A DNA stretch of 64,000 bases, from the NCBI GenBank assembly GCA_001179505.1, contig CDMY01001052.1, forward strand, positions 1 through 64,000, in the 5' to 3' direction. Below the pieces are notes generated by a model. It searched no databases and was not told the origin of the DNA. It was given only the letters and a program-made list of their open reading frames with translations. Both the position numbers and the translations under genes were made by a program. This document shows positions 38,595 to 57,904 of the stretch, in pieces. The DNA comes from Vitrella brassicaformis CCMP3155 (lineage: Eukaryota; Protista; Chromerida). Positions within the stretch are counted from its first letter, which is position 1, and each line of letters starts with the position of its first letter.

Positions 38595-41070
38595 TCACAG
38601 CTCGACTTTCCACGTCTGAGCTGTCTTGTCGCCACCTCCAGCTCTGTCATCGGATGTCCTCGTGTGTAGGGGGGCAGCGGGCAATTCATCCTCATACCCC
38701 GCAGCGATGCCCCGCTGGCCCTCCAGCGCCGCACGAGGCGCGTCGAGACCCTCCAATGGCTCCACACCCTTCACACACACGCAAACGCACCACACACAAC
38801 GAGTCCATACCCCCCTGTGTGCTCTTTTCGCTCGGTGGCTGACTCACTTTGAAGCTTCGCGAGGTGTACGGCACCAGCACCGATGCGAGCCCCACACTTA
38901 GCACGCCCTCCCCCTTGACCATCAGCTGCTCGCCCGCGGCCTCCCCCCCGCCCCCCGCCCCCTGCACAGTGCCGTTTGCAGAGGTGTGGAACTCGCGGAT
39001 GGTGCCCCGGCCGATGAGTGAGTGCTCCACTGTATGGTGGTCGGCTGTTCGGCTTGGGATGGCGGGGAAAGGAAGGGAGTCGATCAGCTCAGCGAACTCG
39101 AGCATGTACCGGCCGTCCCATTCACGGACGCCCAGCGCCACCTCGAGCTCATATGGGGTGCATACGGGTGCAGGGAGGTCCTTGCTGAGTGCCTCTGTGA
39201 GTGGGTCCTCCGGAGAGGCCATGTGACAGAATGCATCGACCTCTGGGAAGTTGCCCAGCTTGGCCACACTCAGCTTCCCGACCACCAGAGACAACACCTG
39301 ACGACCAGCCGACCTGCGTCATGCACCACACACACACAGCACACAACACACATGCACACACACACACACACACACCATGAGACCACTTTTTCGTTCTTCT
39401 CACGTGTGTGTGCCAACAAAACTGACCGAATGAGCCTCTTCAGTCTGTCATGAAGCTTCCTATGGTGCTGCAGTGCGACTGTGCCGTAGACCAGGCCGAT
39501 CACTCGAGCGGTGCGGACGGCCTCCACCGCCCTGTACCGCCTCATCAGCAGCCGGCCTGACTGGGACGACACCTCACATAACGAGCCACGGACTGGCGAG
39601 TACTGCCATATCTGACACAGACACACATGGACACATGGGAGGCCATGTGTGAGGGAGGGATGGTGGATGGCCGGGGTACCTACCTTGTGTGTGTTGCCAT
39701 GCCGCTTGAGGATCCGCGTCAGGAGGGGGCTGTCATCCTCAGCTGATCACGGGCACATACGCATATACAGGCATGCGATGCCCGTAAAGAACACAATGCT
39801 GCGATGGTGCCGTGACTCCCATTGCGTGCGCGTAGAGGAGTACCTATACACACAAGCTGCAGCTGCCCCGAGTCAGAACATGGGAGCGAATCAAGGTAGG
39901 CGCTCTCAGGCGAGTGATCGGGGGAAACAGGGGCCACGCGGACAGACAGAGGCTGGCAGGGGCCAATAGAGAGAGAACAACCGCTCGAATATGTCAGCAG
40001 AATTGTGGACCTGTCGCCCTGCTCACCTGCAGGTCCCTTCTCCCAGGTGACGCCTCGCCGCTGTCTGATGGCCGATCTCTCACTCGGACAGCACACACTC
40101 GACGATTGGCAACTGAACCACACACCACACACACACAGAGAATCACGTCACTTCGCGCCTCCCTCGCCCCCGAGAACGAGCTCTTCGCCGCTGACCTTGC
40201 AGAGGCACAACAATCGAGTCCTTCTGTCCATCCGCCTCCTTCGCATCGCCTTCGCCCTCTTGGTCGAGATGCAGCGACGTCCTGGGGACGGCCACGGCCA
40301 CATCGAAAGGCGTCGACGAGTCATTCGCATCGATGACCATGGTGGAGCCGTTGCTGTCGGCTGTGTGGGACGGTGGCGGGATGGGCATGGCATCGAGCAG
40401 CTCGTTAAGGGCGTGGTGGTAAGCCACGTCGTAGATCAAAAGACAGGGAGATGAGAAGAGAGCGTTGGAGTCCATCTGAGTGTGAATGCAGGACACGCAC
40501 GGCACACCCGTCCATGCCACCAGGAGGACCCTGCCACAGGTCAGTGCGCGTCTGCCTACCTGTTTGATGAGCTGTGCGGCGTCGATTGGTACGCGCCCGA
40601 ACACCCACATCACGGGCAGACCGTGAGCCGTCACCGACTGACACGACGGGCCGTAGTGCACAATACTGTCTGATGGACAAGCAAACAAACAAGCAAGCAA
40701 ATGAACAAGCAGACAGACACAGAGCCATCCATGCATCCATCCATCCATCCATCCATCCATTGCCGTCTTGCTACCCTCATACACCAACCTGCCTACCTGC
40801 TCCATAGTGCTGTGCAGCCACCTCGTCCACGGAGCACGCCCCATAGGCAGTGTCGCCCAGCACGAACACCAGACACTCAGACGCGCCGCATTGGCGAAGG
40901 CGTCGCTGAAGGGCCGAGCAGACGGCAGGTGCGTCCCTGAGGAGCGTGTCAGGGAACTGAAGCGCGGTTCGGCGAAAGCCGTGCCTATGGATGAGTGAGG
41001 CGATGTGGTTGATCTCGTAGAAAGATTCCAGCGACACTGGGCACACGCTCCCATCGCCATTCACAGCCAT
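38595..41070 (-). CDS. DPH2: Diphthamide biosynthesis protein 2
   Basis: TALQFPDTLLRDA, VLGDTAYGACSVDEVAAQH, IVHYGPSC, IGLVYGT, VVGKLSVAKLGNFPEVDAF, VCTPYELEVAL, RSFKGV and the DPH2-type tail GQRGIAAGYEDE. Confidence 0.9.
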
Positions 41071-41387
41071 TGAGTTCGAGAAACTTCCCGCGGAGATCTC
41101 CAAAGCTTGCAAGCAGTTTCACGCAATGTCCTAAGTGGCCCAAAGCTTGCAATGCGAGCTCAGACCGCAGATATTTTGTTAAATGAGTTTGCAAAGGCCT
41201 GCTGCGTGTCCAGGGAGTGGGGTGCTCATTGTGGGAGAATGTTCGGTGCCGTCTGCCCGCCGGCCAAGATGCTCCTTCGCTGGCCTGCCTGTGCCGTTGG
41301 ATGTACGAAGCCTTGGCGACGGCCGGTCCTTCTCTTCTGCACCGCTCTAAGTGAAGAGACTCCACCAACTCAGCGTAACCGGACAAA

Positions 41388-42810
41388 ATGGTCTTCTCTC
41401 GCCTGGCCTTCGTCGCGGTGGTCTTCCTCGCCATACCTGCCCCGCCATGCGCGGCTGACTGCGACGCCGATGAGTTTGAGGTACGCTGCCCGCCACATCC
41501 GTCCATCCGTGTCGTTTTGTGTGCTGTTTGGCTATGTTTGGCAGGACGATGACGGCTGCGAACGTGCGTGAGTTCCACAATACTGTACAGTGGCAGGCAC
41601 ACGCATGACTGTGTTGTTCGTATTGTTTGAATCATGCAAGGCATCATCGCGGGCAATCCCGAACTCTTCCAAGATGGCACCGGTGACGTCACTGCGGAGA
41701 GGTATGTGAAGGCCAATACCGCTGTTTTGTCGGACGGCACCGTCGTTGCAAGCGACAACGTCCGATCTTCTAGGAACATCATTGCCCAGGGTGAGCTCCA
41801 TCGCACAATGCACTATTACTTCACTTAAGATGACGACTGCATGTAACGTGCAGGCACCATTGAGGCGGGTAATCCCAGCGAGTTCACTGAAAACGACGGC
41901 GACGTCAAGGCAGAAACCGATGTCGAGGCTGATCGGAGTGTCCGAGCTGGTATCGACGTCATTGCCGAAGACGACGTCATTGCAAGAAACAACGTCATTG
42001 CTGGCTCTGGTACGGGTGTCATTGCTGACGGCGTGTGTCTGTATTGCAAGCAGCGTTGCCATGAATGTATTATAGGTTCGGACTTCGACGGAGAAGTGAT
42101 CGGCGACAGTAAGCTCCAGGCCATGTACCGACGAGTTCTTGTGACAATGGTGGCTTGCTTGTGCATCAGGCATACGGACAGGCCAGCCATCTGAACGGGA
42201 GGTTCGCAGAGGTGACATCGGCGCGACAGCAGACCTGCAGGCCGACGACACATGCTACTGCCCACAAGCGGTGACGAGACGCGCTTTTGCGCATTCATTC
42301 GAGGTCCGAGGCAACGACAGCGACCGTCCCTCGACACCCATGGCTGAGTGGGGCGATCGAAATCGGTCGATGGCGTACGAGGCCTTCAGACAGCTTCGTG
42401 TGCGGACTGGCGGCGATGCTCGGCTTGGCCTGGCCGCCAAGGAGGTCCAAAGATTGTTCCCAATGGCCGTCAGGACGCTCCTGCCAGACGACGATGGCGA
42501 TGATGATGCTGAAAGTGAGGCGGAGAAGAACGGGGAGATGACCATCGACCTCACTCAGCTGCTCTACACACAAATGGCCGTCATTCAAGACCTCATCACC
42601 GAGAAGGAAGACCTCCGCAAGACGACTGGCGGCTTGACCAAGCGGCTTGATCAGCTGGCCAAGGCTAACAAGGGGCTGATGAAGGCGAATGAGGCCATGA
42701 TGGGTCGCATGGCTCGTCTGGAGCAAGGCAGCAGTAAGAGCGAAAGCAATGAGCCGTCTGGTCCGATTGAGGCACTGCAGAAGATGGCCAAGGGGCTCCT
42801 GGCGCCGTGA
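41388..42810 (+). CDS. Secreted protein with hexad (DVxAxx) repeats, an S74/ICA-like chaperone domain and a coiled coil
   Basis: Phase-consistent exons 41388-41480, 41545-41563, 41641-41790, 41854-~42009, 42076-42109 and 42170-42810; signal peptide; AYEAFRQLRV...RLGLAAKEVQRLFPMAV...TIDLTQLLYTQMAVIQDL, followed by heptads. Confidence 0.7.
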
Positions 42811-45800
42811 CGAATTTTTCGTTACTTTGGGAGTGTTATGTGTATGTGTGGCTGTGTGTGTGGAGTGGTCGAGTGTGGAGTGCCGGGCGATTTTCTCGTG
42901 TGGTGGGGAAGACGTGCAGGGGTGTGGATCCGTGTGCTCTTGTCCAAAGGGATCGAAGGCACTGAAGCGCTGCGTGGGTGCTTGTGCTTGTGGAATGGCT
43001 CTGCTCTCAGTGGAGAATGAAAGACTGCGCGAGGGGGTGCGTGTGTGCGTCTCTGTTTCGTCTGTTGCACGTGGGTGCTTGACCCTATGTGATATGCTCA
43101 GTGCAGAACGCTGCACGGTAGACTTCATACGTAAGCCCTGTGTGTGTGTGTGTATTGTGTGTGCGGGAGAGAATGATTGAGAGGGATCTTATGAATTCAA
43201 TGGTAAACAAATCCACTCAGTGTGAAGAGTGGTGTGAAGGGCTGCAGTCAGTCAGTCAGTCGGTCTCCGTGTCCTTCCCTCCCCTCCCACACACACACAC
43301 AGGCCTCGTTCACGCACAATCGTCCGCAACGTACATGTCCACACAACACCCCTGAAGGCCGACAGACACACACACACCTCTCTCCCCACCCACCCCAAAC
43401 GCACTCAGGCAGCCCCGCCTCCCTCTCTCCACAATCAAGCCGCACTCAATGATACGATGCGACTTTCACAGGCTGCCTGCCTGTCTGCCGTCTCGATTGA
43501 CAGCATCGCCCACACACCGCACGTGATCGAATGAACGACCAAATACACCACACCGTTACATATACCGCCTTGCTTTAGTTATCGGTGGTCCGTCCAGCCC
43601 ACCACATAGGCAACCACACCCGACACACGATACGAACGAAACGAAACGAAGCGAAGCGGAACGGAGCACGCCACACAGCAGACAGACAGACAGGACAGCC
43701 TGCCGACGGACACACGCGACCAGGCTGGCTACCAAACGGACAGGCTACAAACGACATACGACATACCAGACAGGAAACAGAACTGCCGACGAGACACGAG
43801 TACACACACAGACACAACCAGATAGAGCCTCGACACGTGTGTGATAGAGCCTCGGCCCACGTGTGATGAGTAATGGATGGTTTTCCGTCGTTCAGGGTCG
43901 TTTTGAGCGGGGAAAAAGGAGTCAATGTGATGGAGGGTGAGTCATTCACGGCGGGCGAGAAACCCCGCAGAAAACAAGCAGAAGATAAAGCAATCACGCG
44001 CTGTACTGATTGCTTTAGGCGATACTTACGGTACACATCCGTCGTCCCTCCCTTCTTTCCTCCCTCCCTCCTACACAGTTCTCCATCGCTTTGGTGCCAG
44101 CCAAGCAGCAGCACACTTTGGCAAAATTCCCCCCGACCACAGCAATTAAGGGTGAGTTAAGTGGGTGGCCTTTCGGCGCCTGCCTCCCGGAACACTCACA
44201 CAGACACGCACACACGCCCTGCAGCCAAATCTCTCTGAGACGCGCCGTGCCCGTCCCCTCCACCACCACCGCACACACGAGGCCGCACATTCCATCTCCC
44301 GCCCGCCCTCCACTTCGTGGCCAACCCACGCACACACACGCATCACATCACACCGTACAAAGGTAGAAAAGGCCACTCACTCTGTCCACATGCAGCACCA
44401 CAACATGCGAGGCTCCTCAAAACTGCTCTCTCCCCCTCTCTGGGGAGGGCCCTCAGACTCCTTCTGTCTCGCGCTGTCCTTCGGTGGGTCAGCCGGCCGG
44501 CTGGCCGGGCAGATGGACGCCTCAAGAAGTGGCGACCCTCCCACCCATCAGGCAATCCATCCATCCATCGCAGGCAGTGGGCCTGCCCGGAGAACGTATA
44601 GGAAGTAGAGAATACACGCACACGAACATGCACAGTCAAAATTGCGTCCTCAGCGAGGGTGTTGTCTGTCTCTCTGTCTGTCTGTCTGTCTGTCTGTCGG
44701 CCTTGTGGACGGGCGTGTTGTGTGTGATGTCATGTGTCATCGATGTCCGTCGTTTTGGTTACAGGCCAAGGAAGCGCTGCCGCACGACGGAGAGCAGTGA
44801 AAGAAAACACTCTATTCGCCCATTTGCTCTAATGGCGCGTATTCGGGTGATGTGACCTGGATAGGTATGTGTGTGTGTGTGTGTATGTGTGTGTGTGTGT
44901 ATGTGTGTGTGTGTGCACATGATGTGTGGCAAAAGAATTGACGAAAGGCAAAAAGGGCAAGGAAAGGCAAGGCAAGACCGCTCTCTTTGGGCACATGAAC
45001 GAATGGCACGCAGACACACACACGTACAGGCAGACAGACAGACACCACACGAGCGAAAAAGCCGTGCCACTGAGTAAGAGAGAGAGAAAAGTACGACTAT
45101 GAGACACCACACCACACCACACACCGGACACCACACGCACAGGGGAGGGGGGGCGGGGGGTGCATGTGCACAGGGACGCACGGATACACTCATCCATCCA
45201 TCTACATATCATCATGGCACATGCACCATACCGACGAATGACAGCGATGTCCTACAGCCATAGAAATGATCTCTCCTACCCGACCAGGCAGCCTGCCTGG
45301 TGAACCTCGCTCCGCTCTCTGCCCTCCGCTCTCCGCTCTATACCGTCGTATGTGAGAAGCCAATTAAGGGAGTCAGGACTGACCGATGTGCGTGGCTGAC
45401 GTGCCTTCGAGTGAGCGCACGTAAGCCACCCACCATCCGGCCGCTTCTCTTGGACGGACGGCACTACATGTCTCTCCTCAAATGGACGTGTGTGTGTACG
45501 CTGCATCCACCACCAGGCAGGCAGGCAGGCAGGCAGGCCAGAAGCCGCCCCTCCCTCTCCTCCTTCGACATGAAACCGACATGAAACGGACGAACGGCCT
45601 TCACGACACAGACAGCACCATATACGACACGATGACCGACACGAATGACACACGAGGGGATTGTCCTTTCTTATCTGACGGGGTGTGGTGTGCTATGTTA
45701 CTGTGTGCCGCGAGGGGCGTATGAAGCAAAAATGTGATGTGTGAAAACTCACGATAAACCAAAAGCCCTCTCCCCCCGACACCCCCGCCCCCTCCCAACC

Positions 45801-46600: not shown

Positions 46601-47664
46601 GACGGACACACACCACATGCGTCTCATGTGTGTGTGTGGTGTGGGTGGATGAGTGCATGAGTGGATTGGAGGGGTACCTTCCTTACCTGCAGTAGCGTCG
46701 CATCTCTTCGACGGTCCTGGGTGCCTCGAGGAAGGCAATGTCCGCACCCATTGCGTGGAAGGCCCGGCAGCGGCGGATGGCCTCATCAAGCCTGCACTCA
46801 CACACACCCATACATACGACAGAGGTGATGTGTGGCTATTTGTGGTCTCTCTCTTCTCTCATCTCCTTCTCATCTCACCCACCCGAGGGAAGCCCGCGCG
46901 TCGGTGCGGGCCAGAATGCAAATGTCGGCGCCCTCATCCCTGCCAGGACACACCAAGCACACAACGGGTGAGAAACGACACGCAGTGGATGTGCTGTGCT
47001 GTGGTGTGGTGTAGCCGGCCGAGCGCACCCCACCGTACCGCGCGTCAATGGCGGCCATGACGCGCATGCAGGCGTCTTCGAACGGGATGACCTCCTTGCC
47101 CGCGGGGTGGCCGCACTTCTTGGGCGCCACTTGGTCCTCTATCATGATGCACGCCACACCCGCACGGGCGTACCCCTGAACCGTCCTCTTGACGTTGACC
47201 GCATTGCCTGTTTGACCCACACACACACAGACCCATGGTGTGTGTCGTGTGTGCACACAGCTACCTGCAGTGCAGTGAAAGCTTACCGTATCCGGTGTCA
47301 CCATCAGCGATGAGCGGGATGCTTTTGACGGCCTCCGTGATCGCCCGGCAGCTGTCCAGCATCTCAGAGTAGGCCAGCATCTGGGTGTCGGGGAATCCAC
47401 GCGCGCCAGACACCGAAAACCCGCTCATGAAGGCGCAGGGGAACCCTGATGGACACACCACACACAGCCGCACACACGCACGATGGATGCAGTGCAGATC
47501 TCAGCTGATCTCTCCCTGATCCAATTAATCCAGTGCGGACCTTCCTGCTCAACGAGCCTGGCGGTGAGATCGTCGTAGCAGCCTGGCGCCTGGATGACCC
47601 CGGTGGGCGAGTTGAGGAGCTCACGCAGGCGCTCGGCAGCGGGGTTGCGGTGGGGACCCATCAT
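46055..47664 (-). CDS. Isocitrate lyase / PEP mutase superfamily enzyme (methylisocitrate or dimethylmalate lyase-like)
   Basis: QAPGCYDDLTARLVEQ, AFMSGFSVSG, PLIADGDTGYGNAVNV, IEDQVAPKKCGH, ILARTDA, GADIAFLEAP, MANLIEGGSTP. Confidence 0.92.
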
Positions 47665-48124
47665 CTTATTTTGGTCGTTCGAGGGGTGGGCTGTGGGCTG
47701 CAGGCGACGTTCAGTTGACCCAGAGATGACGGGAGAGAGAGGGATGGTAGGGAAGCAGGGAGGCCAGCAGGCAAGAAGGAGGAGAGTGACGGCGGATATC
47801 AAAGGGTGCTAACGAATATGAATTGCCGTCCAGTGATCGCTTTCGGCCAATGGACGGCATATTTTTTGCCGATTCCTGGCCAAGTGGAGACACGAGACAC
47901 TTCGGTGTTATTTAGCTATGGTGTCGAGTGTCCCGAAAGCCACATGTTCACACCTAGCTACACAGTCACTCCGAAAAACGACACAACACATGCAACACAC
48001 ACCGATGGTAAATCAATCACAAGTGTTTGTCGGTCTCTGTCTGTCAGAGGCTGTTCGCCTCTTTCTCGGTCAACATCTTTCATTCCAACCGACCGCAACC
48101 AACGACCTGGTGGTATGGTATGAT

Positions 48125-50177
48125 TCATCCCGTCTCTGCTGGCTCAGCTTCTACGAGACCCTGGTTGATGAGGAGCTGCTGGAGCTCCCCCTTGTCGAAC
48201 ATCTCAGACACAATGTCCGCACCGCCAACGAACTCGCCACTGACATACAACTGCGGGATGGTCGGCCAGTCTGAGAACTCCTTGATGCCCTGCACACGCA
48301 CACGCACACGCACACGCACACGACAGACACATGTGTGTGTGTGTGCATGTGCGTGTGTGGACAGTGCAGTGCAGAGGAACGCCGTCGACCTCTCTGATGG
48401 CCATGGACGAGAGGACGTCTACAGAGACGAATTCGAGGCCGAGTGTTCTGAGGATGGCCACCACTGACGCCGAGAAGCCACACTGCGGGGTGGACGGGGT
48501 GCCCTGAATGAAGAAGAAGAAGAAACAAACGCAGGTACGGATCAGGGCAGCCCCGAGGAGTCGAGTCGGATGGAATGAATGAAGCACCGAGTGAGTGTGC
48601 CTGTCCTGTCCGTCCGTCGCTGGGTGTTACCTTCATGAAGAGAACAACTTTATGCTCCCTCACAATGTCACTGCAGCCAGCCAGCCAGCATCCAATCCGT
48701 GTTGTTGTCCATCTCACATCTCACTGGCCGGCTGACTCACTGACTCACTCAATGACTTCTTTAATGGGTTTGTTGATCTCTCGCCTCGTCGTCTTGGGCG
48801 CGTCAGCCTTTGAGGGATCCTGCACCACACACACACCGCCACTCGTGTGTGTGTGTGTGTGTGTGCGTGAGTGTGGTGGTGCGTGTGGCTTTGCTTGCCT
48901 TGAGGTACTCGAGCACACTGTCGACGAAGCTGTTGTCGCCCTCCCCCAGCCACTCCACCTCCAAGTCACTGTTGACTACACAGGCAAACCTGAACCAACC
49001 AACACCCAATGCAAGCAAACCATCCATCCATCGCACAAAGAAGGCAATCAATCAGTGTGAGCCTTAGTTCTCGCCACCGACCTTCTCGCCCTGAGGCCCA
49101 TCAGCGCCCTGGAAGCGTCGAGCTCCATCCCTGACGCCTGGTGGAGTGGACGGAATGATGAATGGTGTAACCATAGATGCGATGATGCATTCCTTCATGC
49201 GTGCGGCCCACGTCCACGCTACGCTTCACACGCACCCGAGTGAACTCGGCGTTTCCGTCGGATATCATCATGACGCGGCCCTCCACGCCCGCGTTGCTCG
49301 ACCATGCTGCACACACACACAAAGGAAGGAAACCTCATGTGTGTGGAGTGGAGTACAGTGAGGGCGTTGGTCAATTCAGGCTGGATTGACCGCACCCCAC
49401 ACACGAATGCGTGGCGTGCCCCGCACACCGACAGACCTTTGAGGACGAATGGATCTGCAAACAAACAGCCAGCCAGCCAGCCAGACAGCAAGCCAGCCAG
49501 CGAGCCACTTTTCTGTCCTCCCGTCCGTTGCCCTCCCTCCCTCACGCACCATTGACAGCGAGGCAGGCCACGACGTCCACGCCAAATGACTTGATCTCAT
49601 CCACCTTCTCCAAGAAGCCTGGAAGGTGCTTCTCAGAACAGGTGGGCGTGAACGCACCTGTGGATCCGTTGCACCGCACCGTCCACACCCACACGCCAAG
49701 CGACACACACAATGCTGCAATGCATCCCACCTGGCACTGCAAAGAGGACGCTCCTCTTCCCCCGAAAGATGTCATCAATCATCACCTGCACGTACAACAC
49801 GCACGCACCAGAAGCGCCAGATGGCCCAGGGATACAATACAATACACTGCACACCATCACGATCATGAGCATCCCGCCCTTCTCACCTCAGCGTCGAGTG
49901 GCAGCGTCCTCACGCGCGCTGATGGGATGGGGTTGCCCCTGCTCAGCTTCATCCGCAGCAGGCTCCGGTGGTGGTGGTGGTGGTGCCTGTGATGCCGCGC
50001 TGCTGCTTCTCTCGCAGGGACTCGGGAGGAAGGAGAGGACAGGGGCGATGGATATCGGTGGAGGGAAAGGGTGAATGCATATGCGTCGGTGCATCTTGCG
50101 GTGAGGAGTGAGGCGGCCACAGCCCAGAGGCTGACCGTCGATAAACATGTACCTTCGAGAGGAGGAAAGATCATCAT
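48125..50177 (-). CDS. Type II peroxiredoxin (Prx5-like) fused to a monothiol CGFS glutaredoxin, with bipartite-like leader
   Basis: Prx: [42 protein letters not shown]. Grx: [38 protein letters not shown]. The junction is a GC-AG intron at 48898-48820. Confidence 0.82.
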
Positions 50178-50540
50178 GTCGTGCGCCGCAGCAGGCGACA
50201 ATTAGTGCGCAATAGCGGTACGTCGCCCTTGCACAGCTCTAGCTATCACACAGCTCTCTGCCTGGCTGTGCGTGTTGCATGTTCGCATACTTACGTAGCT
50301 AGGCCTATCCGTCCGTCGCATTCTCTGTCCATCCATCCATCCAGAGAACAAACAGCACGGACGTCTTCACCAGACGCACGCGCACACGGATACATACACC
50401 CCAACACAACACGCACGATACCATAACCACATCATTCAATCCATCTCTCTCAGCTGTACAAGTACTTAGCCGCCCCCCCTCCCCCGCCCTGCCCTGCCTG
50501 TCTTCCCCCTTAGACAGCCTGTGTGCCGGCCGGCCGTCAC

Positions 50541-52514
50541 TCACTTTGACCGTTTTTTGTTGTGTTTGGCGGTGGCGCTGCTGCTGAGCTCTTCGGGTGT
50601 TGCCCGAGTCCACTCCACAAACGCCTCGTACCCGCTCCTCTTGGTGATGAGGCCGCTGATGAAGGCGTCAGACGACCGCCCACGCCACGGCACCGCCCGC
50701 ATGGACGCACCCACAGCCGCACCGATGCGGAATGGCACCAGCTGCAGACAGACACACAGGTCCGCCCATTCATCCAGCCAGCAAGACGGCATTGTTTTGT
50801 TTGTCTACTTGTTCACTCACCTTATTGGCGGATCTTCTCTTGAGCGACGCCTTTCGCCCGGCGTCATCGGCTCCGTGCCGCGCCAGGTACTGCTCGAACT
50901 CGGAGGACCAGTCGATGGTGTGCTCGACGGGGCAGGCGTCCGCCGTGGCGCCCAGAATGTACGTGTTGGTCGGCGAGAGCATCGCACCACCCACACCCTG
51001 CTGCTGCTGCTGCTGCTGGGAGGCCGCGGCCGTCTTGTTGATTCGCTCCTGGAGGAACCCTCTTCCCTTCTCCTCATTGATCTGCGCGTTTTAGACAGAC
51101 AGACACACACACAGACACATAGATGCCGACCGACAACACACCATTGTGGTTGCGCACTGCCCTGCACTGCACTGCACTGCCTGCGCTGGTTTACGATGCT
51201 GATCATCTTGCTGAGTCTCTGCTGCTGCATGAGGGGCGGGGGGCAGCGGTCCTCTCTGTGCCAGGTCACCAACGACGTCAGCAGGCAGCTGTGCCCGTTG
51301 CGGGTGGAGTTCAGCAGCGGCGCCCAGGAAGGCAACACGCTCTCGAAACCTGCGTGAAACCAAGAGAGATCGCCACCGTGTGTCTGTGTGTGTGTGTGTG
51401 TGAGCCGGTCGCTGACCGAAGTACTGTGCCGCGGCGAATATGGAGGCGTCGACACGGTCGAAGAGGAGAGCCCCGCTGTCTGTGCCGTCCTGATGTGTGT
51501 CGACAGGGAAGAAGTGCGTGAGAGCCTGCCCTTTTGTGTTGAGTTGGCTGATGAGGTCGGGCAGGCCCTGCACATACACACACGACACAAGGCAACGGAT
51601 CGGACATGTCTGTCTATGTCTGTGTGTCTGTGTGTGTGTGGATGGGTGACTGTGTGACCCTTGCGCCTCTGCATGTGACGCAGATGTCCACTTCATGCGC
51701 CTCCAAGGACGACACGAACGACTCGAGCAAGTCCCTGCACACACACACATACACATGAGGGAGGGAGGGAGGGAGGGAGGGGGGTACTCACCCACCTCAG
51801 TGCAAAGTAGAGTGCCCCATGCAGGTCATTCGTCGGCACGTGATGCCGTCTCCCTGTCTCAATCACAGCCTACACCNNNNNNNNNNNNNNNNNNNNNNNN
51901 NNNNNNNNNNNNNNNNNNNNNNNNNNNNNNNNNNNNNNNNNNNNNNNNNNNNNNNNNNNNNNNNNNNNNNNNNNNNNNNNNNNNNNNNNNNNNNNNNNNN
52001 NNNNNNNNNNNNNNNNNNNNNNNNNNNNNNNNNNNNNNNNNNNNNNNNNNNNNNNNNNNNNNNNNNNNNNNNNNNNNNNNNNNNNNNNNNNNNNNNNNNN
52101 NNNNNNNNNNNNNNNNNNNNNNNNNNNNNNNNNNNNNNNNNNNNNNNNNNNNNNNNNNNNNNNNNNNNNNNNNNNNCCCCCCCCCCCCCCCCCCCCCCCC
52201 CCCACACACACAGAGGGAGACAGACGATGAGAGAGCCGAGCAGCCACATCACACACATCCCATCAAATGACTGACGCCGGCCGTCTGCCACTGCTCACGC
52301 ACTGTGAGACTCACAGGTGTGTCCCATCCCGCCAGCGGCTCGGCGTTTTCGACAATCATGCACCCATGGTCTCGGTCAAATTGCAGCGGGTTCACGCGAC
52401 AGAAGTGCGATTCGGGAGCCCCCATGGGCAGCAGCAGGCCGCCAGTGCGCCACCGGACCAAAGGCAGCCTGTGTGAATGAGGGAGGGAGGGAGGGAGGAG
52501 GCTGTCATCTGGTC

Positions 52515-52551
<37 letters not shown>

Positions 52552-54644
52552 TGTATGTCTGTTTGTGTGGTTACTTCTGTCTGGGGTCTGGCATGAGGAA
52601 GTATCGATTCTCGCGGGCCATCTGGTACTCGACGTGCCCACGAAGCTGAGTCATGAACTCCCGCCGCTGCTTCAAGACGCCTGCCGCGTCCACACACACA
52701 CACGTTTGTTCGGTCGGCCACTGCACTCACTCATTCGCACCCCCACCTCACCATTGATGTCGGGTTTGTCTCTGCTCATTTTGATGACGGCTTGTAGGCA
52801 TGCGCGTATCAGGGAGCGCGGCTCTCCCGGCTCGAAGCGCGTCAGCAGCCGGCTGCTGCTGCTGCTGCTGCCACTGCTGCCGGTGGTGGTGGGATTGTCG
52901 CTCTCGGCCATGTATGGCCACTCACCATCCGTCTCGTCGGTGTCAAGCAGGAGTTTCTCCAACTGACCGACACAGACACAGACACCCACCAAGAGACACC
53001 GTCGACGACATGACGGGTGTGTGCACACCCCTCCCCCCCACCATCTGTCTGTCTGTCTGTCTGTCTGTCTGTCGACTCACCCACCATACCACACCATACC
53101 ATGTGTCCCTGGACGTGCGTCAGGGCGGCCGAGTACCACAGTGCGATGGCCAGGTCGATGCCCTCCCTCCCATAGGTATACAGCACCCGCAGTATCATCA
53201 GGTTGCCCACCACCACCAGCGGCATGTAGTCGTTGACCAGGACACGCACCGCCAGCCGCCCACAGCCGTCACCTCTTGGCAGCCTGGCAATAGTAGTAAT
53301 GACGTGCCGCAGATCTCCGCTCGCCGCGAAGCAGAGGTGGAGAGGGGGGATGGTGGCTGGTGCGGCTGGTGCGTCGGTGTCTTTGAGCTCGTTGTCTGGG
53401 AGGTTGAGGAGGTCGTATGCCGGGAGGTTGCCCCAGTTCACCTGGTGGCCATGGATATTGGGCGTGTCGGGCACGCTGAACGTACGCAACAATTAAAGGG
53501 AAGACACACACGGCCAGATGGCCGGGAGTGAGTGCTCTGTGAGACTGTGTGGGTGTGGGTGTGGGTATGGATATGTGGTTACTTACGGTAGCCATTGCTC
53601 GTGTGGGTGGGTGACAGATCTGGGCAGCCAGTCCTTCGAGCCCATAGGGTCCTTGCACAGCTTCTTGTGCGTCGGCCAATGGCTCACCTGACACTCCTTG
53701 CAACAATACCTGCGTCCATCCATCCAGACACACACAGACACACACACACACATCATCTGGTCCACCCACTCTGCTGGCTCATGGCTGCCTGCCCTGCCCC
53801 CTCACTGACCTGACGAGCTTACACGACCCGCACTCAGACCTGCCCATCTCAGTACACCCATTCCCCGCACTACTGTTGGCACACGGACAGCAGTCCATCT
53901 GCCCCCCGTCCGGCCGGCTGCCCATCAGCCGCCTGCAGCCTTTCTCCATCAGCCGCTGCACTTTGGCCAGCGACACGTCGGTGTGCTGCTGCACGAAGCC
54001 TTCGAAGCGAGATGTGAACTCGGCGTTGAAGACGTGCATAAGACCGAGGGCCTGGCGGGCCTTTGGGCGGAGTGGCTGGGGCAGCTCCACCTTCTCACGG
54101 ACATAGTTCTCGGGCAGATAGCTGACACACACGCGCAGACAGGGAGAGAGAGAGAGAGAGAGAGAGAGAGGCTGATATGATGCGCACACGGTGGGTGCTC
54201 TGTTGGTTCCATTGGTTGGCTGACTTGACTTGCCTGTCATAGAGCGTGAGCAGCCACAGAGCCCTCTCCCCCTCCCCCTCCTCTCCACTAGTACTGGTCG
54301 GCACCACCCTTCTGTAGGCATCCTTCAGTCGGTCCAGACACTCGGCAGCCACACTCACCACCGACACGACACCAACACCCTCCCCCTCCCCGAGTGGTTC
54401 GCCCAGCCGGCTGGCTGCCTCTGCCTCCTCATCTGCCTCGATCCGGCGCTGATTCTCCCGCTTCCACCGGTCCTCTAGCTCTTTTTGCGTCTCCCGCGCC
54501 CGGGCGTTGTTGGGCTCCAGCTCCAGACACGCACATATGCTCCGCTCGGCCTCCGAGTAGTTCTCGAGGGCCATCATTGCACGCGCCCGGCGGAGATGGC
54601 CTCTGCTCCAACCTGCCGACAGGCATGCATGTCTGTCTGTCTGT

Positions 54645-54676
<32 letters not shown>

Positions 54677-55057
54677 TTGGTTTGTGTGTCTGTGTGTCAG
54701 ACTGTCTTTCTGTGGCGCTCAAGCAATTAAGTACCTACCTGGATTGATCCGTATGCATTTCTCGGCGTCGGAGAGCGCCTCGTGCGGCTGACCGTTGGCG
54801 AGATATGCGGCTGAGCGGTTGCTGTGGTAGTGGACGGGTACGGATCCCGTGGCCCGGGCGATGATCTGGATGGCTTCGGTGAAGCACGCGATGGCCGCCT
54901 CGTACTCGAGCGCATCGAACTGCTCGTTGCCCTTCCGCCGCAAAGACTCGGCTGCATCACACTCGCGGTGGGATGACGACATTTTCCCTTTCTCCTTCCC
55001 TCGCGCGAGCTGGCGTCTTGGGGGCGGTGACTCGGAAGAGGCCCGCAGTCTCAGCAT
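50541..55057 (-). CDS. TPR plus MYND zinc finger plus DUF4470 protein (spans a gap)
   Basis: TPR RRKGNEQF...SNRSAAYL...[43 protein letters not shown]; DUF4470-like WGNLPAYDLLNLPDNE...LCFAASGDLRHV...VNDY; start may be 54979, 55057 or 55087. Confidence 0.82.
51877..52176. other. Assembly gap (300 N) followed by a C homopolymer
   Basis: 300 N then about 27 C. Confidence 0.99.
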
Positions 55058-55068
55058 CGTGGGAAGTG

Positions 55069-57904
55069 ATGACCACAGCCTGGCCATCGCACGAGAGCCG
55101 CGATGCGGAACTGGAGGCCGTGCAGGACGGCGCCCCCGCCCCGCTCTCCGACGTGATTCAGAAGAGAGAGGAGGGACCCGGTGTCACTGAGGTGCATGAA
55201 GGCGATATCGGCAAGGGCAAGGGCGACAAAGGAGATGAACGTGATCATGCCCAGAGAGAGGGGGAAGTGCCCGACGAGTCGGATGACCCCTTCGTGAAGG
55301 ATGTTCTGCAGGAGTCTCAGCGGTCCTCGGCCCGCGCTCCGCCGTCGAAGCGCTTCACGTCGGGCTGGATGCGCATTCTGCACGGCTTTTGGCTGCTGGG
55401 CTTTGTGGCTTTCGGCGGCCCCATTGCCCACCTCGGCATGTTTGAGAGGGAATTTGTGGAGAGGTCAGTCAGTTTCAATTGGTTGGTCGACGTCGGCGCG
55501 TGCAGTGGTCAGTCACTTGGTTTAAACAATGTCTGCAGGCGTGGTTGGCTGTCGATGGAGGTCTTCACCGAGATGATCGCCCTCGGACAGTGCCTGCCCG
55601 GGCCAACCTCCACACAGGTGGTCAACTGACTGACTCGTGCACTGCACGGCTGCGTGTCTCTGCCTCTCTGGACGGCCAGTGCGCGGATGGATGGATGGAT
55701 GTGTGACGACGCAGATAGCATTTGCCCTCGGGACCACACAAGAGGGGCTGCTGGGCGGCATTCTCTCTGGATGTCTCTTCCTCTTCCCCGGCTTTTTCCT
55801 GCAGATCATCGCAGGTAGGTCGGTCGGTCGGTCGACGGATGAGACACACACACACTTTCGCACGCACCAGTCACCCCTTCTGCGTACCTGTGTGTGTGCG
55901 TGTGTATATGCGTGACACACAGGTGTTGGTGCGGCAGAGATTCTGGAGAGGCCCTCGATCTTCGTCCGATGCCTCAATGGAGGTAGGTGCGGGGGCATTG
56001 GCTGGCTGGCTGGCGGCGAATTCAGAACCAAGCGCATATAATTGGATATGTGTGTGTGTAGGGCTGAGTGCGACAGGCATAGCTCTCGTGTGGGCGGCTG
56101 CCGTGGGGCTGGGCAGGAAGACCATGAAGGACAAAGTCACAATCGTATGTAGTCAGTCCAAGAAACACACACACACACAGACACACAACAGACACGAGCA
56201 CCGCAGCTGTGCATGTCTCATGCACGAATGTTGCAATGCCTGCCTGCAGGCTTTGGGTGTGTTGTCGGCGGTGGTGTCGTATTACCACGGCGAGCCCTAC
56301 ATCTTCCCCACGCTCATCGTCTTCGGCGGCCTCACCACCATCGCCTTCCACACCTACATGAAAACAGACCTCACCCTCAAAGACAAAGACCACGAGACGA
56401 CAGTAAGTACTAGGCCTCCTCGACACACGGGGCGCAGAGAGCCCTCTCTCTCTCTCTCTCTCTCTATTCTGTGGCCATGTGCTGTGCGTGTGTCTGTCTG
56501 TCTGGATGTGGGATGTGTGTGTCATCGCTGTGCACTGCAGGTGGGTCAGGGCATCCCTATGTGGCTCGGTGGGACGTTGATCGCTGCGTGGCTGTCGGTG
56601 CTGCTGATTGTGGTGGTCTGGCGGTCCCAGCTCGACTACGAAGACGCCAAAGCACTCTTCTGGTGTGCACTGCAGCATGACACTCATATTCCCACTACCC
56701 ATCCATCCATCCATCTGTATCTCTGTGTGTGTGTGTGTGTGTCTGTGTGTGTCTGGTGAGGTTTGAGTCGTTTTACCGCACCGGGTCGATGATCTTCGGC
56801 GGCGGCCAAGTCGTGCTGCCTCTCATACTTGAGTGAGGGAGCGCGTCAACCGATACTTAATGAGTGGATTGCCGGACTGACGAGTGCCTGCCTTCCTGCA
56901 ATGTCTTGTCTTGTTTTGTCGTGTGGCCGGGACACACAGGGAGGTGAGCACGAGTTCCGAGTCCTGCTCAACGATCGATGGAAAGGTGGGGAGGGCATCC
57001 GATAAGCGGACGGACACATCGCATCGACCACAGCATATATACGATACGATCGATGGTGTCTCATATCTGTGTGTTCACAGACGGTGTGCGACACCGTCGT
57101 AGAGCCCACCATCCGAGAGGGAGGACGCTCGTGGGTCAGCGAGGAGGAATTCCTGGCCGGTTAGCAAGATGCCTCTCTCCCTCCCTCCCTCCATCTTGCA
57201 CACATCCGGATGGTCGTCTGTCTGTCTGTCTGTCTCTTTCTGTGTGCCTGTGACTGGCAGGTCTGGCGATATCTCAGTCCTTCCCCGGGCCTCTTTTCAA
57301 CTTCTCGTCTTACCTTGGGTGGCTCGTCGGCGAATTCCCTGGCGCACTCCTCTGCTGGTACGATGGGGCGGCCATGGTATCCGATCCTCCCTCTTTGATC
57401 GTCACTCGGCCTGTCCATATTGATGCGATTGATTGAAGGCTCGGTCTGTTCTCTCCCGGTGTGATACTGATATTCGGTCTGCTGCCGTTCTGGAAGCAAC
57501 TGAGGAAGGCGTCCATCTACCGCCGGGCGCTCCCCGGCCTCAATGCGTCGGCCGCCGGGCTGGTCTTCGCGGCTTGTGCGTCCCTTTGCTTCAAGGTCAG
57601 TGAGTGAATGAGTGAGTCGAATGGCATGTATATGGTGAGTGAGTGAGTGGGTGTGGACGGGCGGTGGTCAGGCGCTGGACAACTCGCCCTTTGTGCACAC
57701 GTCGGTGTGCATCGGCATGATCGGCTTTGCCCTCATCTACGCCTACAAACTGTCGGCACCACTGGTCGTCATCACAGGCAAGCAGCCAGGCAGAGACTAG
57801 AGACACGCATCATGATGTCTCTCCCCTGCATATGGGTGTGTCGGTGTGTGTCCCACTCAGGTGGTATTCTGGGCATCATTGGATGGGCGACGGACATGAG
57901 GTGA
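55069..57904 (+). CDS. Long-chain chromate ion transporter (CHR/ChrA family)
   Basis: Two homologous halves: LGFVAFGGPIAHLG...LGQCLPGPTSTQ and FYRTGSMIFGGGQVVLPL...WVSEEEFLAGLAISQSFPGPLFNFSSYLG; LPGLNASAAGLV. Confidence 0.92.

What the first reader, a model, noticed from the sequence alone, without database searches (positions are those of the whole stretch)
41388..42810. Secreted phage-tailspike-like protein with an intramolecular chaperone domain
Seen: a signal peptide; two full and one partial repeat of about 50 aa (I.AGNP.....GDV.A...V.A...V.....V.A...V....N.IA.G) built from 6-residue DVxAxx units; then a segment matching the S74/ICA pattern (A...F.QL.V...GL.A.EVQ.LFP.AV...ID..QL......IQ.L); then a coiled coil. 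Established: this order occurs in trimeric phage tailspikes and fibres and in MYRF, where the chaperone folds a triple beta-helix and self-cleaves via a Ser-Lys dyad (SDxxxK). Here SDRPST has no Lys. Inference: an undescribed eukaryotic secreted trimeric fibre or adhesin with a possibly uncleaved chaperone, perhaps of viral or bacterial origin.
Basis: partly seen in the sequence, partly recalled or inferred. Interest (0 to 1): 0.75.

Follow-up and report, generated by a model that had tools for sequence, protein, structure and literature searches.

The report
Algal secreted fibre, dead phage-type cap
The coral-associated alga Vitrella brassicaformis expresses a spliced six-exon gene for a secreted, probably three-chain fibre whose tail is a distant relative of the "chaperone" cap of phage tail fibres and animal MYRF. 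The tail has lost the lysine it needs to cut itself off, and the gene is one of at least 14 unstudied paralogues.

Summary
Window 41388-42810(+) is a six-exon gene of Vitrella brassicaformis encoding 363 aa (CEM39779.1 / A0A0G4H794). All five GT..AG introns are seen in spliced contigs of three runs.

The protein has, in order:
- a signal peptide;
- two exon-sized ~50-aa repeats (44% identical) plus a partial third, with strict 6-residue periodicity;
- a CxC motif;
- a ~110-aa domain;
- a ~60-aa coiled coil;
- a conserved GL[ML]AP end.

Pfam's PF13884 model misses the domain. Other tests place it with the S74/ICA chaperone:
- hhalign against Vitrella's canonical S74 domains gives 98% probability, E 2e-13;
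- the family profile reaches two PF13884-positive proteins;
- a domain model matches MyRF, endoNF, T5 and GA-1 ICA structures (Z 7.0 to 4.8; unrelated chains 2.7 or less).

No family member has a lysine at the dyad position. A homotrimer model scores 0.84 against 0.00 for controls, with an i/i-6 inter-chain stagger typical of a triple beta-helix.

The family occupies at least 14 loci and was found only in Vitrella and a few unnamed metagenome contigs. Against a syntenic metagenome orthologue, the repeat head gives dN/dS 1.85 and the tail 0.29.

UniProt already auto-labels the domain, and this scan has already reported paralogues on other DNA of this genome. I call it a new variant of a known kind. 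Its function is untested.

The parts
41388..41480 (+). Exon 1 (aa 1-31): signal peptide (about aa 1-23/24), then an acidic N-terminus with Cys21 and Cys25
   Evidence: The ORF and the GT donor at 41481 are seen. The joint 41480>41545 is in a spliced contig of X7. The only hydrophobic segment of the protein lies here. The exon is conserved in the orthologue L023.
41545..41563 (+). Exon 2, a 19-nt mini-exon (DDDGCE + first base of R38). It shifts the phase from 0 to 1 and carries Cys36.
   Evidence: Joints 41480>41545 and 41563>41641 are in X7 contig 11. The exon is present in P0001 and in the orthologue.
41641..41790 (+). Exon 3 (150 nt, phase 1-1): beta-helix repeat 1, aa 38-88 (IIAGNP... hexapeptide units)
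   Evidence: The repeats are 44% identical, E 7e-10. Lag-6 periodicity has z 4.45. The joint 41790>41854 is in X1 and X2. AF2 pLDDT is 82-90 with strands every 6 residues.
41854..42009 (+). Exon 4 (156 nt, phase 1-1): beta-helix repeat 2, aa 88-140
   Evidence: The joint 42009>42076 is in X1, X2 and X7. Inter-chain contacts such as 135/129 and 129/123 appear in the trimer model.
42076..42108 (+). Exon 5 (33 nt, phase 1-1): 11-aa linker or short beta unit, aa 140-151
   Evidence: Joints 42009>42076 and 42108>42170 are in X1, X2 and X7.
42170..42252 (+). Start of exon 6: partial third repeat, aa 151-178 (IRTGQP...GDIGATADLQADD)
   Evidence: The repeat pattern is shared, although similarity alone is weak (E 1.1). 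Trimer contacts cover 163-196.
42253..42261 (+). CxC motif (Cys179, Cys181) at the junction between beta-helix and cap. It is a candidate inter-chain disulfide knot (inference).
   Evidence: It is conserved in 10 of 12 aligned paralogues and lies inside the predicted trimer interface.
42283..42618 (+). Degenerate ICA / Peptidase_S74-like domain, aa 189-300. It includes the SD remnant S201-T206 (42319-42336) without the dyad Lys, and an acidic insert (aa ~254-272).
   Evidence: - hhalign Prob 98%, E 2.1e-13.
- The family HMM reaches PF13884-positive P0021 and P0022.
- Foldseek and VIA match 7dc3, 3gw6, 4uw8 and 3gud.
- All 100 ESM Atlas feature hits carry PF13884.
- There is no Lys at the dyad position.
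- dN/dS is 0.24.
42550..42729 (+). Long helix, aa 278-337. It is the last helix of the ICA fold, extended into a predicted trimeric coiled coil.
   Evidence: AF2 predicts helices 278-337 and 93-153 of the domain model, with pLDDT 87-96. Trimer contacts fall at 3-4 spacing over 275-320.
42760..42810 (+). Conserved C-terminal motif GPIEALQK..KGL[ML]AP, followed by the stop codon. Its role is unknown.
   Evidence: The motif is present at the very C-terminus of 8 of 14 aligned paralogues. The ending GLMAP also occurs on the distant members P0016 and P0018.

Best explanation
This is a bona fide, expressed nuclear gene of Vitrella brassicaformis. It encodes a secreted homotrimeric fibre.

Shown here:
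- the gene model and its splicing;
- the exon-sized hexapeptide repeats;
- homology of residues ~189-337 to the intramolecular chaperone (ICA, Peptidase S74) domain of phage tail fibres and MYRF;
- the absence of the catalytic lysine throughout the family;
- the family's size and its narrow taxonomic range.

Predicted by models: three chains assemble through the ICA-like domain and its extended C-terminal triple coiled coil. This sets the register for an intertwined triple beta-helix of about 140 residues per chain, built from 6-residue strand-turn units.

Inferred:
- Without the Ser-Lys dyad, the cap is not released. It stays as a permanent trimerisation and perhaps anchoring module, possibly locked by the CxC cysteines.
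- The fast-evolving beta-helix head is the exposed, interacting part of an extracellular or cell-surface fibre (wall component, adhesin or recognition fibre).
- The family probably arose by duplication and divergence from Vitrella's own canonical, dyad-bearing secreted S74 proteins. Repeat number then grew by duplication of symmetric phase 1-1 exons.
For: **Gene and expression**
- The hand-made model equals the 363-aa P0001.
- An identical complete ORF is in MMETSP Transcript_2549.
- All five introns are skipped in contigs of three runs.
- A syntenic orthologue lies next to a diphthamide-synthesis gene in a metagenome contig.

**ICA identity**
- hhalign of A2 against A3 gives Prob 98%, E 2.1e-13 over 80 columns.
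- The family profile hits PF13884-positive P0021 (E 6.4e-5) and P0022 (E 6.3e-4) among 1.84 billion proteins.
- The seven best Foldseek hits are all chains of ICA structures.
- VIA gives Z 7.0, 6.2, 5.2 and 4.8 for 7dc3, 3gw6, 4uw8 and 3gud, against 2.7 or less for unrelated chains.
- All 100 ESM Atlas feature hits, and 9 of 10 structure rows, carry PF13884.

**Dead dyad**
- No family member examined has Lys at Ser+5.
- S587A or K592A abolishes MyRF cleavage (PMC8326128).

**Trimer**
- ipSAE is 0.84 in all three runs, with the best control at 0.00. At least 97% of contacts agree between runs, and pLDDT is 81.
- The pass mark was reached by 21 of 30 solved homo-pairs and by 0 of 23 single chains.
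- Contacts run i to i-6 between chains along residues 54-196, and at heptad spacing along 275-320.

**Periodicity and repeats**.

**Secretion**: a single N-terminal hydrophobic segment is followed by an acidic stretch, in several paralogues.

**Head against tail**
- dN/dS is 1.85 for exons 3+4 and 0.29 for ICA plus coiled coil, Fisher p 8e-4.
- Heads differ in length and sequence among paralogues, while the core has 49% mean column identity.

**Family**: at least 14 loci on at least 12 contigs.
Against: - Pfam PF13884 and a PDB sequence-profile search do not detect the domain.
- The hhalign match begins only at helix alpha-1, so the catalytic N-terminal segment is not alignable and positional equivalence of S201 is approximate (plus or minus 1-3 residues).
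- Foldseek E-values are 0.008 or higher, and the VIA Z of about 7 is in the range where common arrangements occur. The case rests on specificity, with only ICA entries on top.
- The trimer pass may be 'from memory' of solved ICA trimers, and the job used three copies, unlike the calibration.
- The AF2 monomer models the repeats as a single-chain solenoid. Its weak, non-significant matches are to left-handed beta-helix acyltransferases.
- The signal peptide was judged by hydropathy only.
- Absence of cleavage, location and function are all untested.
- dN/dS comes from one pair of sequences, and the head value is not significantly above 1 (p 0.14).
Confidence: 0.6

Rival explanations
1. The cap is still removed. 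Either it cuts itself by a non-canonical mechanism that uses other conserved residues, or a secretory-pathway protease removes it. The mature product would then be only the beta-helix fibre, as in phage tailspikes.
For: An S/D-rich remnant (SD, S.D, TD) persists at about the position of the canonical SD cleavage motif in most paralogues. The ICA fold and its trimerising helix are retained. Several residues just downstream are invariant (E210, W211, R216, S217) and could in principle serve another chemistry.
Against: The general-base Lys is missing in every member examined, and K-to-A abolishes cleavage in MyRF. The segment between SD and AEW varies in length among paralogues, which fits a precise active site poorly. 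The coiled coil and the extreme C-terminal GL[ML]AP motif are conserved across paralogues and under constraint. That suggests a role in the mature protein, though a purely chaperoning role would also be conserved.
Confidence: 0.2
2. The N-terminal repeats fold as a single-chain beta-solenoid, of the left-handed hexapeptide-repeat or bactofilin type. Three such rods would merely be tethered by the C-terminal trimeriser, or would polymerise, and would not intertwine as a triple beta-helix.
For: The AF2 monomer gives a confident single-chain solenoid (pLDDT 82-90 for 50-140). Its nearest PDB neighbours are LpxD, LpxA and gamma-carbonic-anhydrase-type left-handed beta-helices. There are weak FapA and Bactofilin Pfam hits and ESM Atlas bactofilin rows. 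UniProt names one paralogue 'Polymer-forming cytoskeletal protein'.
Against: Those matches are not significant: Foldseek E 0.12 or higher with TM about 0.1, Pfam E 0.03 or higher, Atlas scores below 0.9. A monomer prediction cannot show an intertwined state. The trimer model places chains in register with a constant 6-residue stagger over about 140 residues, with expected error 0.5-0.6 A. A C-terminal ICA domain is the known nucleator of triple beta-helices (PMC8326128).
Confidence: 0.15
3. The locus is an endogenous viral fibre gene, from a polinton-like or giant virus. It would not be a host gene with a host function.
For: PF13884-capped fibres are ubiquitous in polinton-like viruses of protists (PMC12220804). 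The same genome holds a low-GC island with intronless ORFs and a canonical S74 fibre-like ORF.
Against: - The gene has five spliceosomal introns, and its repeats coincide with symmetric exons.
- GC content is like the rest of the window.
- It lies between a diphthamide-synthesis gene and an isocitrate-lyase-family gene, with synteny kept in a related organism.
- A pattern scan of IMG/VR found no relative, and tblastn of the phage collection found none.
- Paralogues are dispersed on at least 12 contigs.
Confidence: 0.04

Closest known systems
C-terminal intramolecular chaperone domain of phage tailspikes and fibres (endosialidase K1F/endoNF 3GW6, T5 L-shaped tail fibre pb1 4UW8, GA-1 neck appendage 3GUD; Pfam PF13884 Peptidase_S74)
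   Same: The fold order is helix, beta-hairpin, helix, strand, long helix. The model aligns at VIA Z 6.2, 5.2 and 4.8. The domain sits C-terminal to a repeat-built, predicted triple beta-helix and is predicted to trimerise.
   Different: - There is no direct sequence hit to PF13884 or to phage genomes.
- The Ser-Lys dyad is lost.
- The domain is followed by a ~60-residue coiled coil and a conserved terminal motif, not by the chain end.
- The host is a eukaryotic alga, and the gene has introns and a signal peptide.
MYRF / MrfA ICA domain with upstream beta-helical stalk (7DC3; PF13884 + PF13887)
   Same: It is the best structural match: Foldseek probability 1.00, and VIA Z 7.0 with 99 aligned residues at rmsd 4.2. 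It is eukaryotic, and its trimer is driven by a C-terminal triple coiled coil (PMC8326128).
   Different: MYRF has an Ndt80-type DNA-binding domain, a transmembrane segment and an active S587/K592 dyad. This protein has none of these. It is secreted, not ER-anchored.
Vitrella's own canonical secreted S74 proteins (e.g. CEM34855.1 = P0021; loci L010-L016)
   Same: They come from the same genome and have an N-terminal hydrophobic leader, an ICA domain and a coiled coil. P0021 is the nearest PF13884-positive relative of the family profile (E 6.4e-5; hhalign 98%).
   Different: P0021 keeps the canonical SDxxxK motif and scores 57.5 bits on PF13884. Its ICA domain still finds T4- and T5-like phage tail fibres at about 30% identity. 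It lacks the hexapeptide repeat head and the GL[ML]AP end.
Fibre proteins of polinton-like viruses of protists with a C-terminal 'chaperone of endosialidase' domain (PMC12220804)
   Same: A modular repeat fibre capped by an S74-type domain in a protist setting.
   Different: Those are virus-encoded, usually very large, and the paper describes the cap as self-cleaving. This gene is a small, intron-bearing host gene with a dead dyad. No IMG/VR relative was found.

Membership tests
Peptidase_S74 / ICA domain (PF13884, PROSITE ICA profile) | Sequence match to the Pfam family model above its gathering score | tested here: not met
   PF13884 did not appear for the last exon, for P0001 or for any of 14 paralogues, even at E up to 10. 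UniProt nevertheless names the protein 'Peptidase S74 domain-containing protein'. I presume this comes from the PROSITE profile, which I could not run.
Peptidase_S74 / ICA domain (PF13884, PROSITE ICA profile) | Homology to canonical members, detectable by profile methods | tested here: met
   hhalign Prob 98%, E 2.1e-13 over 80 columns. The family HMM hits PF13884-positive P0021 and P0022 at library-wide E 6.4e-5 and 6.3e-4.
Peptidase_S74 / ICA domain (PF13884, PROSITE ICA profile) | ICA fold (alpha1, beta-hairpin, alpha2/3, strand, long C-terminal helix) | tested here: met
   The AF2 domain model has mean pLDDT 74. The seven best Foldseek hits are chains of ICA entries. VIA gives Z 7.0, 6.2, 5.2 and 4.8 against 2.7 or less for other chains. 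These scores are moderate in absolute terms.
Peptidase_S74 / ICA domain (PF13884, PROSITE ICA profile) | Catalytic Ser-Lys dyad (SDxxxK) at the N-terminal edge of the domain | tested here: not met
   P0001 has SDRPST, with Thr at Ser+5. No family member examined has Lys at that position; P0007 has one at Ser+4. The region is not alignable by hhalign.
Peptidase_S74 / ICA domain (PF13884, PROSITE ICA profile) | Homotrimerisation through a C-terminal triple coiled coil, with a trimeric beta-helical cargo upstream | tested here: met
   This is a model only. ESMFold2 with three copies gives ipSAE 0.84 against a best control of 0.00. Contacts lie along 54-196 with a 6-residue stagger and along 275-320 at heptad spacing.
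Peptidase_S74 / ICA domain (PF13884, PROSITE ICA profile) | Autoproteolytic release of the domain after folding | not testable with these tools
   This needs protein biochemistry. From the missing Lys and the MyRF K592A result, I predict no release.
MYRF family | Ndt80/PhoG-type DNA-binding domain upstream of the ICA domain, and a transmembrane segment downstream | tested here: not met
   There is no NDT80_PhoG or MYRF_ICA hit. The only hydrophobic segment is the N-terminal leader.
Bactofilin / hexapeptide left-handed beta-helix proteins | Significant match to PF04519, or to hexapeptide-transferase families or folds | tested here: not met
   Pfam gives Bactofilin E 0.062 in one member and FapA E 0.03 or higher in four. 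Foldseek E is 0.12 or higher, with TM about 0.1. ESM Atlas scores are 0.86 or lower. The 6-residue periodicity itself is real.

The most novel reading that the evidence does not exclude
Vitrella and its close relatives may have turned the phage and MYRF 'disposable' folding cap into a permanent building block. On this reading, a lineage-specific family of at least 14 secreted fibres has an inactivated ICA domain, a coiled coil and a GL[ML]AP terminus that together form a fixed trimeric base, perhaps anchored in the cell wall or on the surface. Exon-duplicated triple-beta-helix heads on that base would diversify quickly, as a variable recognition or adhesion surface. That surface could face bacteria, viruses or the coral host.
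Probability: 0.3. Interest if true: 0.7.

Novelty: new variant of a known kind. Interest (0 to 1): 0.5.

Why it matters
ICA/S74 domains are known as self-removing folding caps of phage fibres. In eukaryotic cells they are known essentially only from the MYRF transcription factors.

Here a free-living or coral-associated relative of apicomplexan parasites carries a whole family of secreted, intron-bearing fibre genes. In these, the cap is conserved but catalytically dead, and it is extended by a coiled coil. If the cap is indeed retained, this would be a natural case of the chaperone domain re-used as a permanent trimerisation module.

The family would also give a simple eukaryotic system for asking what the ICA fold does apart from cleavage. 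The fast-changing head hints at a role in cell-surface interactions of an alga whose surface biology is almost unknown.

Practical points:
- The family is missed by Pfam, so plain domain censuses of eukaryotic S74 proteins undercount it.
- At least one paralogue appears fused to a neighbouring gene in the public annotation.

Tried and rejected
- Pfam scans of single exons, of the last exon and of all 14 paralogues gave no PF13884, only weak coiled-coil and solenoid noise.
- phmmer and hmmsearch against PDB sequences gave only coiled-coil noise.
- The full-length AF2 monomer with a 14-sequence alignment had pLDDT below 50 over 181-280, so it was useless for the cap. Its Foldseek search returned only non-significant left-handed beta-helix enzymes.
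- The IMG/VR pattern scan with the family alignment confirmed no relative among 282 pattern matches.
- tblastn of the P0001 cap against 50,697 phage records found no match.
- Literature searches for Vitrella plus intramolecular chaperone found nothing.
- I considered a plastid-targeting reading of the leader and rejected it. The region after the hydrophobic segment is strongly acidic (DCDADEFEDDDGCE), unlike a transit peptide. This rests on inspection only.
- I considered a MYRF-like membrane-tethered factor and rejected it, because there is no DNA-binding domain and no transmembrane segment.
- I never typed or submitted a joined spliced model. Early searches used exons by reference. Later ones used the database protein P0001, which the word search returned and which equals the spliced product.
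Full report
**Source and gene model**

The window is contig C1052 of a 72.7-Mb, 1064-contig assembly. The word search returned a 100%-identical protein named 'unnamed protein product [Vitrella brassicaformis CCMP3155]', which is CEM39779.1 / UniProt A0A0G4H794.

Reading the DNA, I derived six exons:
- 41388-41480
- 41545-41563
- 41641-41790
- 41854-42009
- 42076-42108
- 42170-42810

All introns are GT..AG. The product is 363 aa, letter for letter the database protein P0001.

I never typed a joined model. Searches before one search used single exons by reference. Later ones used P0001, as returned by the tool.

**Expression and splicing**

A de novo MMETSP transcript (Transcript_2549, 'type:complete') encodes the identical ORF.

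I laid Logan contigs of four runs on 41300-42900. Every one of the five introns was skipped in at least one spliced contig of runs X1, X2 or X7:
- X7 contig 11 joins exons 1-2-3.
- X1 contig 1 and X2 contig 6 join exons 3-4.
- X7 contig 12 joins exons 4-5-6 through to the stop.

The genomic run X3 is collinear with the DNA.

**Anatomy**

1. Residues 1-23 are the only hydrophobic segment. A strongly acidic, Cys-containing stretch follows. Paralogues P0006, P0014 and P0018 begin the same way. I read this as a cleavable signal peptide, on hydropathy and inspection only.
2. Exons 3 and 4 (150 and 156 nt, both phase 1-1) each encode one ~50-aa repeat. The two are 44% identical (21/48, E 7e-10). A third, partial copy opens exon 6 but is weak by itself (E 1.1).
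3. Across residues 39-178, hydrophobic residues recur every 6 residues (lag 6 z 4.45, lag 12 z 3.2). In 2000 shuffles, none reached the observed value at either lag.
4. A CxC motif (179/181) is conserved in 10 of 12 paralogues.
5. A conserved core of about 110 residues follows.
6. A long helix spans 278-337.
7. The protein ends in a GPIEALQK..GL[ML]AP motif, shared by most paralogues.

**Is the core an S74/ICA domain?**

HMMER against Pfam says no, for this protein and for all 14 aligned paralogues. A profile search of PDB sequences found only coiled coils.

Four more sensitive and largely independent tests say yes.

(a) Profile-profile comparison. The genome contains canonical PF13884 domains at eight loci, with SDxRxKT motifs. 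hhalign of the family core (A2) against an alignment of such canonical domains (A3) gives probability 98%, E 2.1e-13 over 80 columns.

(b) Profile search of representatives. An hmmsearch with A2 over 1.84 billion representative proteins finds only 20 proteins at E 0.001 or better. The two most distant, P0021 (E 6.4e-5) and P0022 (E 6.3e-4), carry PF13884. P0021 scores 57.5 bits and has an SDEKFK motif.

(c) Structure. An AF2 model of residues 186-345, built on a 26-sequence alignment (mean pLDDT 74), has the ICA order of elements.
- Its seven best Foldseek hits in the PDB are all chains of ICA structures: MyRF 7dc3, GA-1 3gud and T5 4uw8. Chains of endoNF 3gw6 follow from rank 9.
- VIA-align gives Z 7.0, 6.2, 5.2 and 4.8 for 7dc3, 3gw6, 4uw8 and 3gud. 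Every unrelated chain scores 2.7 or less.

(d) ESM Atlas. All 100 nearest clusters by language-model features carry PF13884, as do 9 of 10 structure rows.

The absolute scores in (c) are moderate. The specificity is what counts.

UniProt's automatic name, 'Peptidase S74 domain-containing protein', agrees.

**The catalytic dyad**

In MyRF, S587A or K592A abolishes cleavage. These residues correspond to S911/K916 of endoNF (PMC8326128).

I anchored on the conserved helix alpha-1 (RSxAYEAF in the family, EEAYEKF in P0021). The canonical Ser then lies 20 residues before the Tyr, and S201 of P0001 lies 19 before it. So SDRPST (window 42319-42336) sits at the equivalent place, with Thr where the Lys should be.

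No family member examined has a Lys at that position. One, P0007, has a Lys one residue out of register. The SD-to-AEW spacer also varies in length. hhalign does not align this N-terminal segment at all.

The family therefore fails the defining catalytic feature while keeping the fold. It is ICA-like in architecture but predicted not to self-cleave.

**Oligomeric state**

A three-copy ESMFold2 job on residues 36-363 gave these results:
- ipSAE 0.84 in all three runs.
- Best of three controls 0.00.
- At least 97% of contacts shared between runs.
- Partner pLDDT 81.

The pass mark was reached by 21 of 30 proteins solved as homo-pairs and by 0 of 23 solved as single chains. The tool warns that three copies differ from its calibration, and that a pass may reflect memory of solved ICA trimers.

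The lowest-error contacts pair residue i of one chain with i-6 of the next (135/129, 129/123, 173/167, 84/78 and others). That is what an intertwined triple beta-helix built from 6-residue units predicts: a single chain returns to the same face every 18 residues. Contacts over 275-320 follow 3-4 spacing, as in a trimeric coiled coil.

By simple geometry, which is my inference, such a molecule would be a rod of roughly 20-25 nm.

The monomeric AF2 model instead shows a single-chain solenoid. Its matches to left-handed beta-helix enzymes are non-significant. I keep that reading as a rival.

**Family, range and evolution**

A six-frame search of the genome with the last exon finds at least 14 loci at E below 1e-9, on at least 12 contigs, plus weaker ones.
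- Several have MMETSP transcripts.
- All named hits of the library-wide profile search are Vitrella proteins. The rest are unnamed metagenome proteins.
- No relative was confirmed in IMG/VR or in phage genomes.
- By contrast, the canonical Vitrella protein P0021 still finds T4- and T5-type tail-fibre genes at about 30% identity, E down to 2e-7.

This gives a chain of similarity: phage fibre cap, then canonical Vitrella S74, then this divergent family. It is compatible with an ancient viral or bacterial source, but it does not date or direct any transfer.

The gene itself is an ordinary nuclear gene.
- It is divergently arranged with a diphthamide-synthesis gene and lies upstream of an isocitrate-lyase-family gene.
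- A metagenome contig (ERZ893784, L023) carries an orthologue with the same exon pattern next to the same diphthamide-synthesis gene.

Against that orthologue, by Nei-Gojobori counting:

| Region | dN/dS | Note |
|---|---|---|
| Repeat exons 3+4 | 1.85 | 46 non-synonymous against 9 synonymous differences |
| ICA domain | 0.24 | |
| ICA plus coiled coil | 0.29 | |

The head-tail contrast has Fisher p 8e-4. The head value is not significantly above 1 (p 0.14). This is one pair of sequences, so it is a lead.

It agrees with the paralogue alignment, where heads differ in length and sequence and the core is 49% identical per column.

**Mechanism proposed**

Shown: the gene, its splicing, the repeats, ICA homology, the loss of the lysine, and the family.

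Modelled: the homotrimer, with its triple beta-helix and coiled coil.

Inferred:
- After import into the ER, the C-terminal ICA-like domain and coiled coil trimerise and set the register for the triple beta-helix, as in phage fibres and MyRF.
- Because the dyad is dead, the cap stays on. The CxC cysteines may tie the chains together.
- The variable head is the exposed, interacting end.
- The conserved GL[ML]AP terminus may dock the base to another component.

The location (wall, surface or medium) and the ligand are unknown.

**Relation to earlier notes of this scan**

The scan had already reported paralogues of this family, and canonical S74 genes, on other pieces of the same genome.
- s1-218456 and s1-231063 describe secreted fibres with a cap that lost the lysine.
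- s1-212003 suggests a permanent scaffold with a fast-evolving head.

My own tests on this locus reach the same reading independently: the lysine loss, the paralogue count and the head-tail contrast.

**Verdict**

This is a new variant of a known kind: a catalytically dead, retained ICA cap on an exon-repeat triple-beta-helix fibre, in an alveolate alga. The domain is already labelled automatically in UniProt but is unstudied. Function remains untested.

Noticed in passing
G000:C484, about 48000-55500 (L024:4001-10000 and L009): GC drops sharply from about 0.50 to about 0.34 at roughly C484:48000. The low-GC stretch holds long intronless ORFs (318, 417 and 267 aa) with no Pfam hit, and a 378-aa open frame ending in a canonical PF13884 domain (48.8 bits). 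It may be an integrated viral element or foreign DNA carrying a fibre gene.
   Followed up: partly
window 38692-41112 (-): A diphthamide-synthesis (PF01866) gene is transcribed divergently from the fibre gene. The same neighbour lies beside the orthologue on metagenome contig L023, so the pair is syntenic in a related organism.
   Followed up: partly
window 46870-47400 (-): An ORF with weak isocitrate-lyase / PEP-mutase family hits (E about 1e-4). It is probably one exon of a housekeeping gene downstream of the fibre gene.
   Followed up: no
L014 (G000:C592:34407-37613), compared with L015, L011 and L012: A second, different Vitrella S74 lineage has heads containing GCG[TI]D.P[LI]. Most copies keep SDGRYKT, but L014 has GESTLAEEIKT in its place. 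So loss of the Ser-Asp motif seems to have happened independently in another S74 subfamily.
   Followed up: no
Protein cluster of P0011; paralogue on G000:C220 (L007): The public gene model CEL94505.1 (1154 aa, named tubulin-tyrosine ligase-like protein 9) clusters at 90% identity with a 188-aa MMETSP transcript of this fibre family. The annotation probably fuses a fibre paralogue to a neighbouring TTLL gene.
   Followed up: no
window 42836-42900: A TG-rich simple repeat lies directly after the stop codon. Contigs of all runs end at 42835, so the 3' end of the transcript could not be seen.
   Followed up: no
L003 (G000:C637:9987-13610), minus strand, 437-aa open frame: One paralogue repeats the C-terminal coiled-coil module (ending RLEQ/RLEE plus a GLMAP-like motif) about three times in tandem. 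This suggests that the tail, too, can expand.
   Followed up: no
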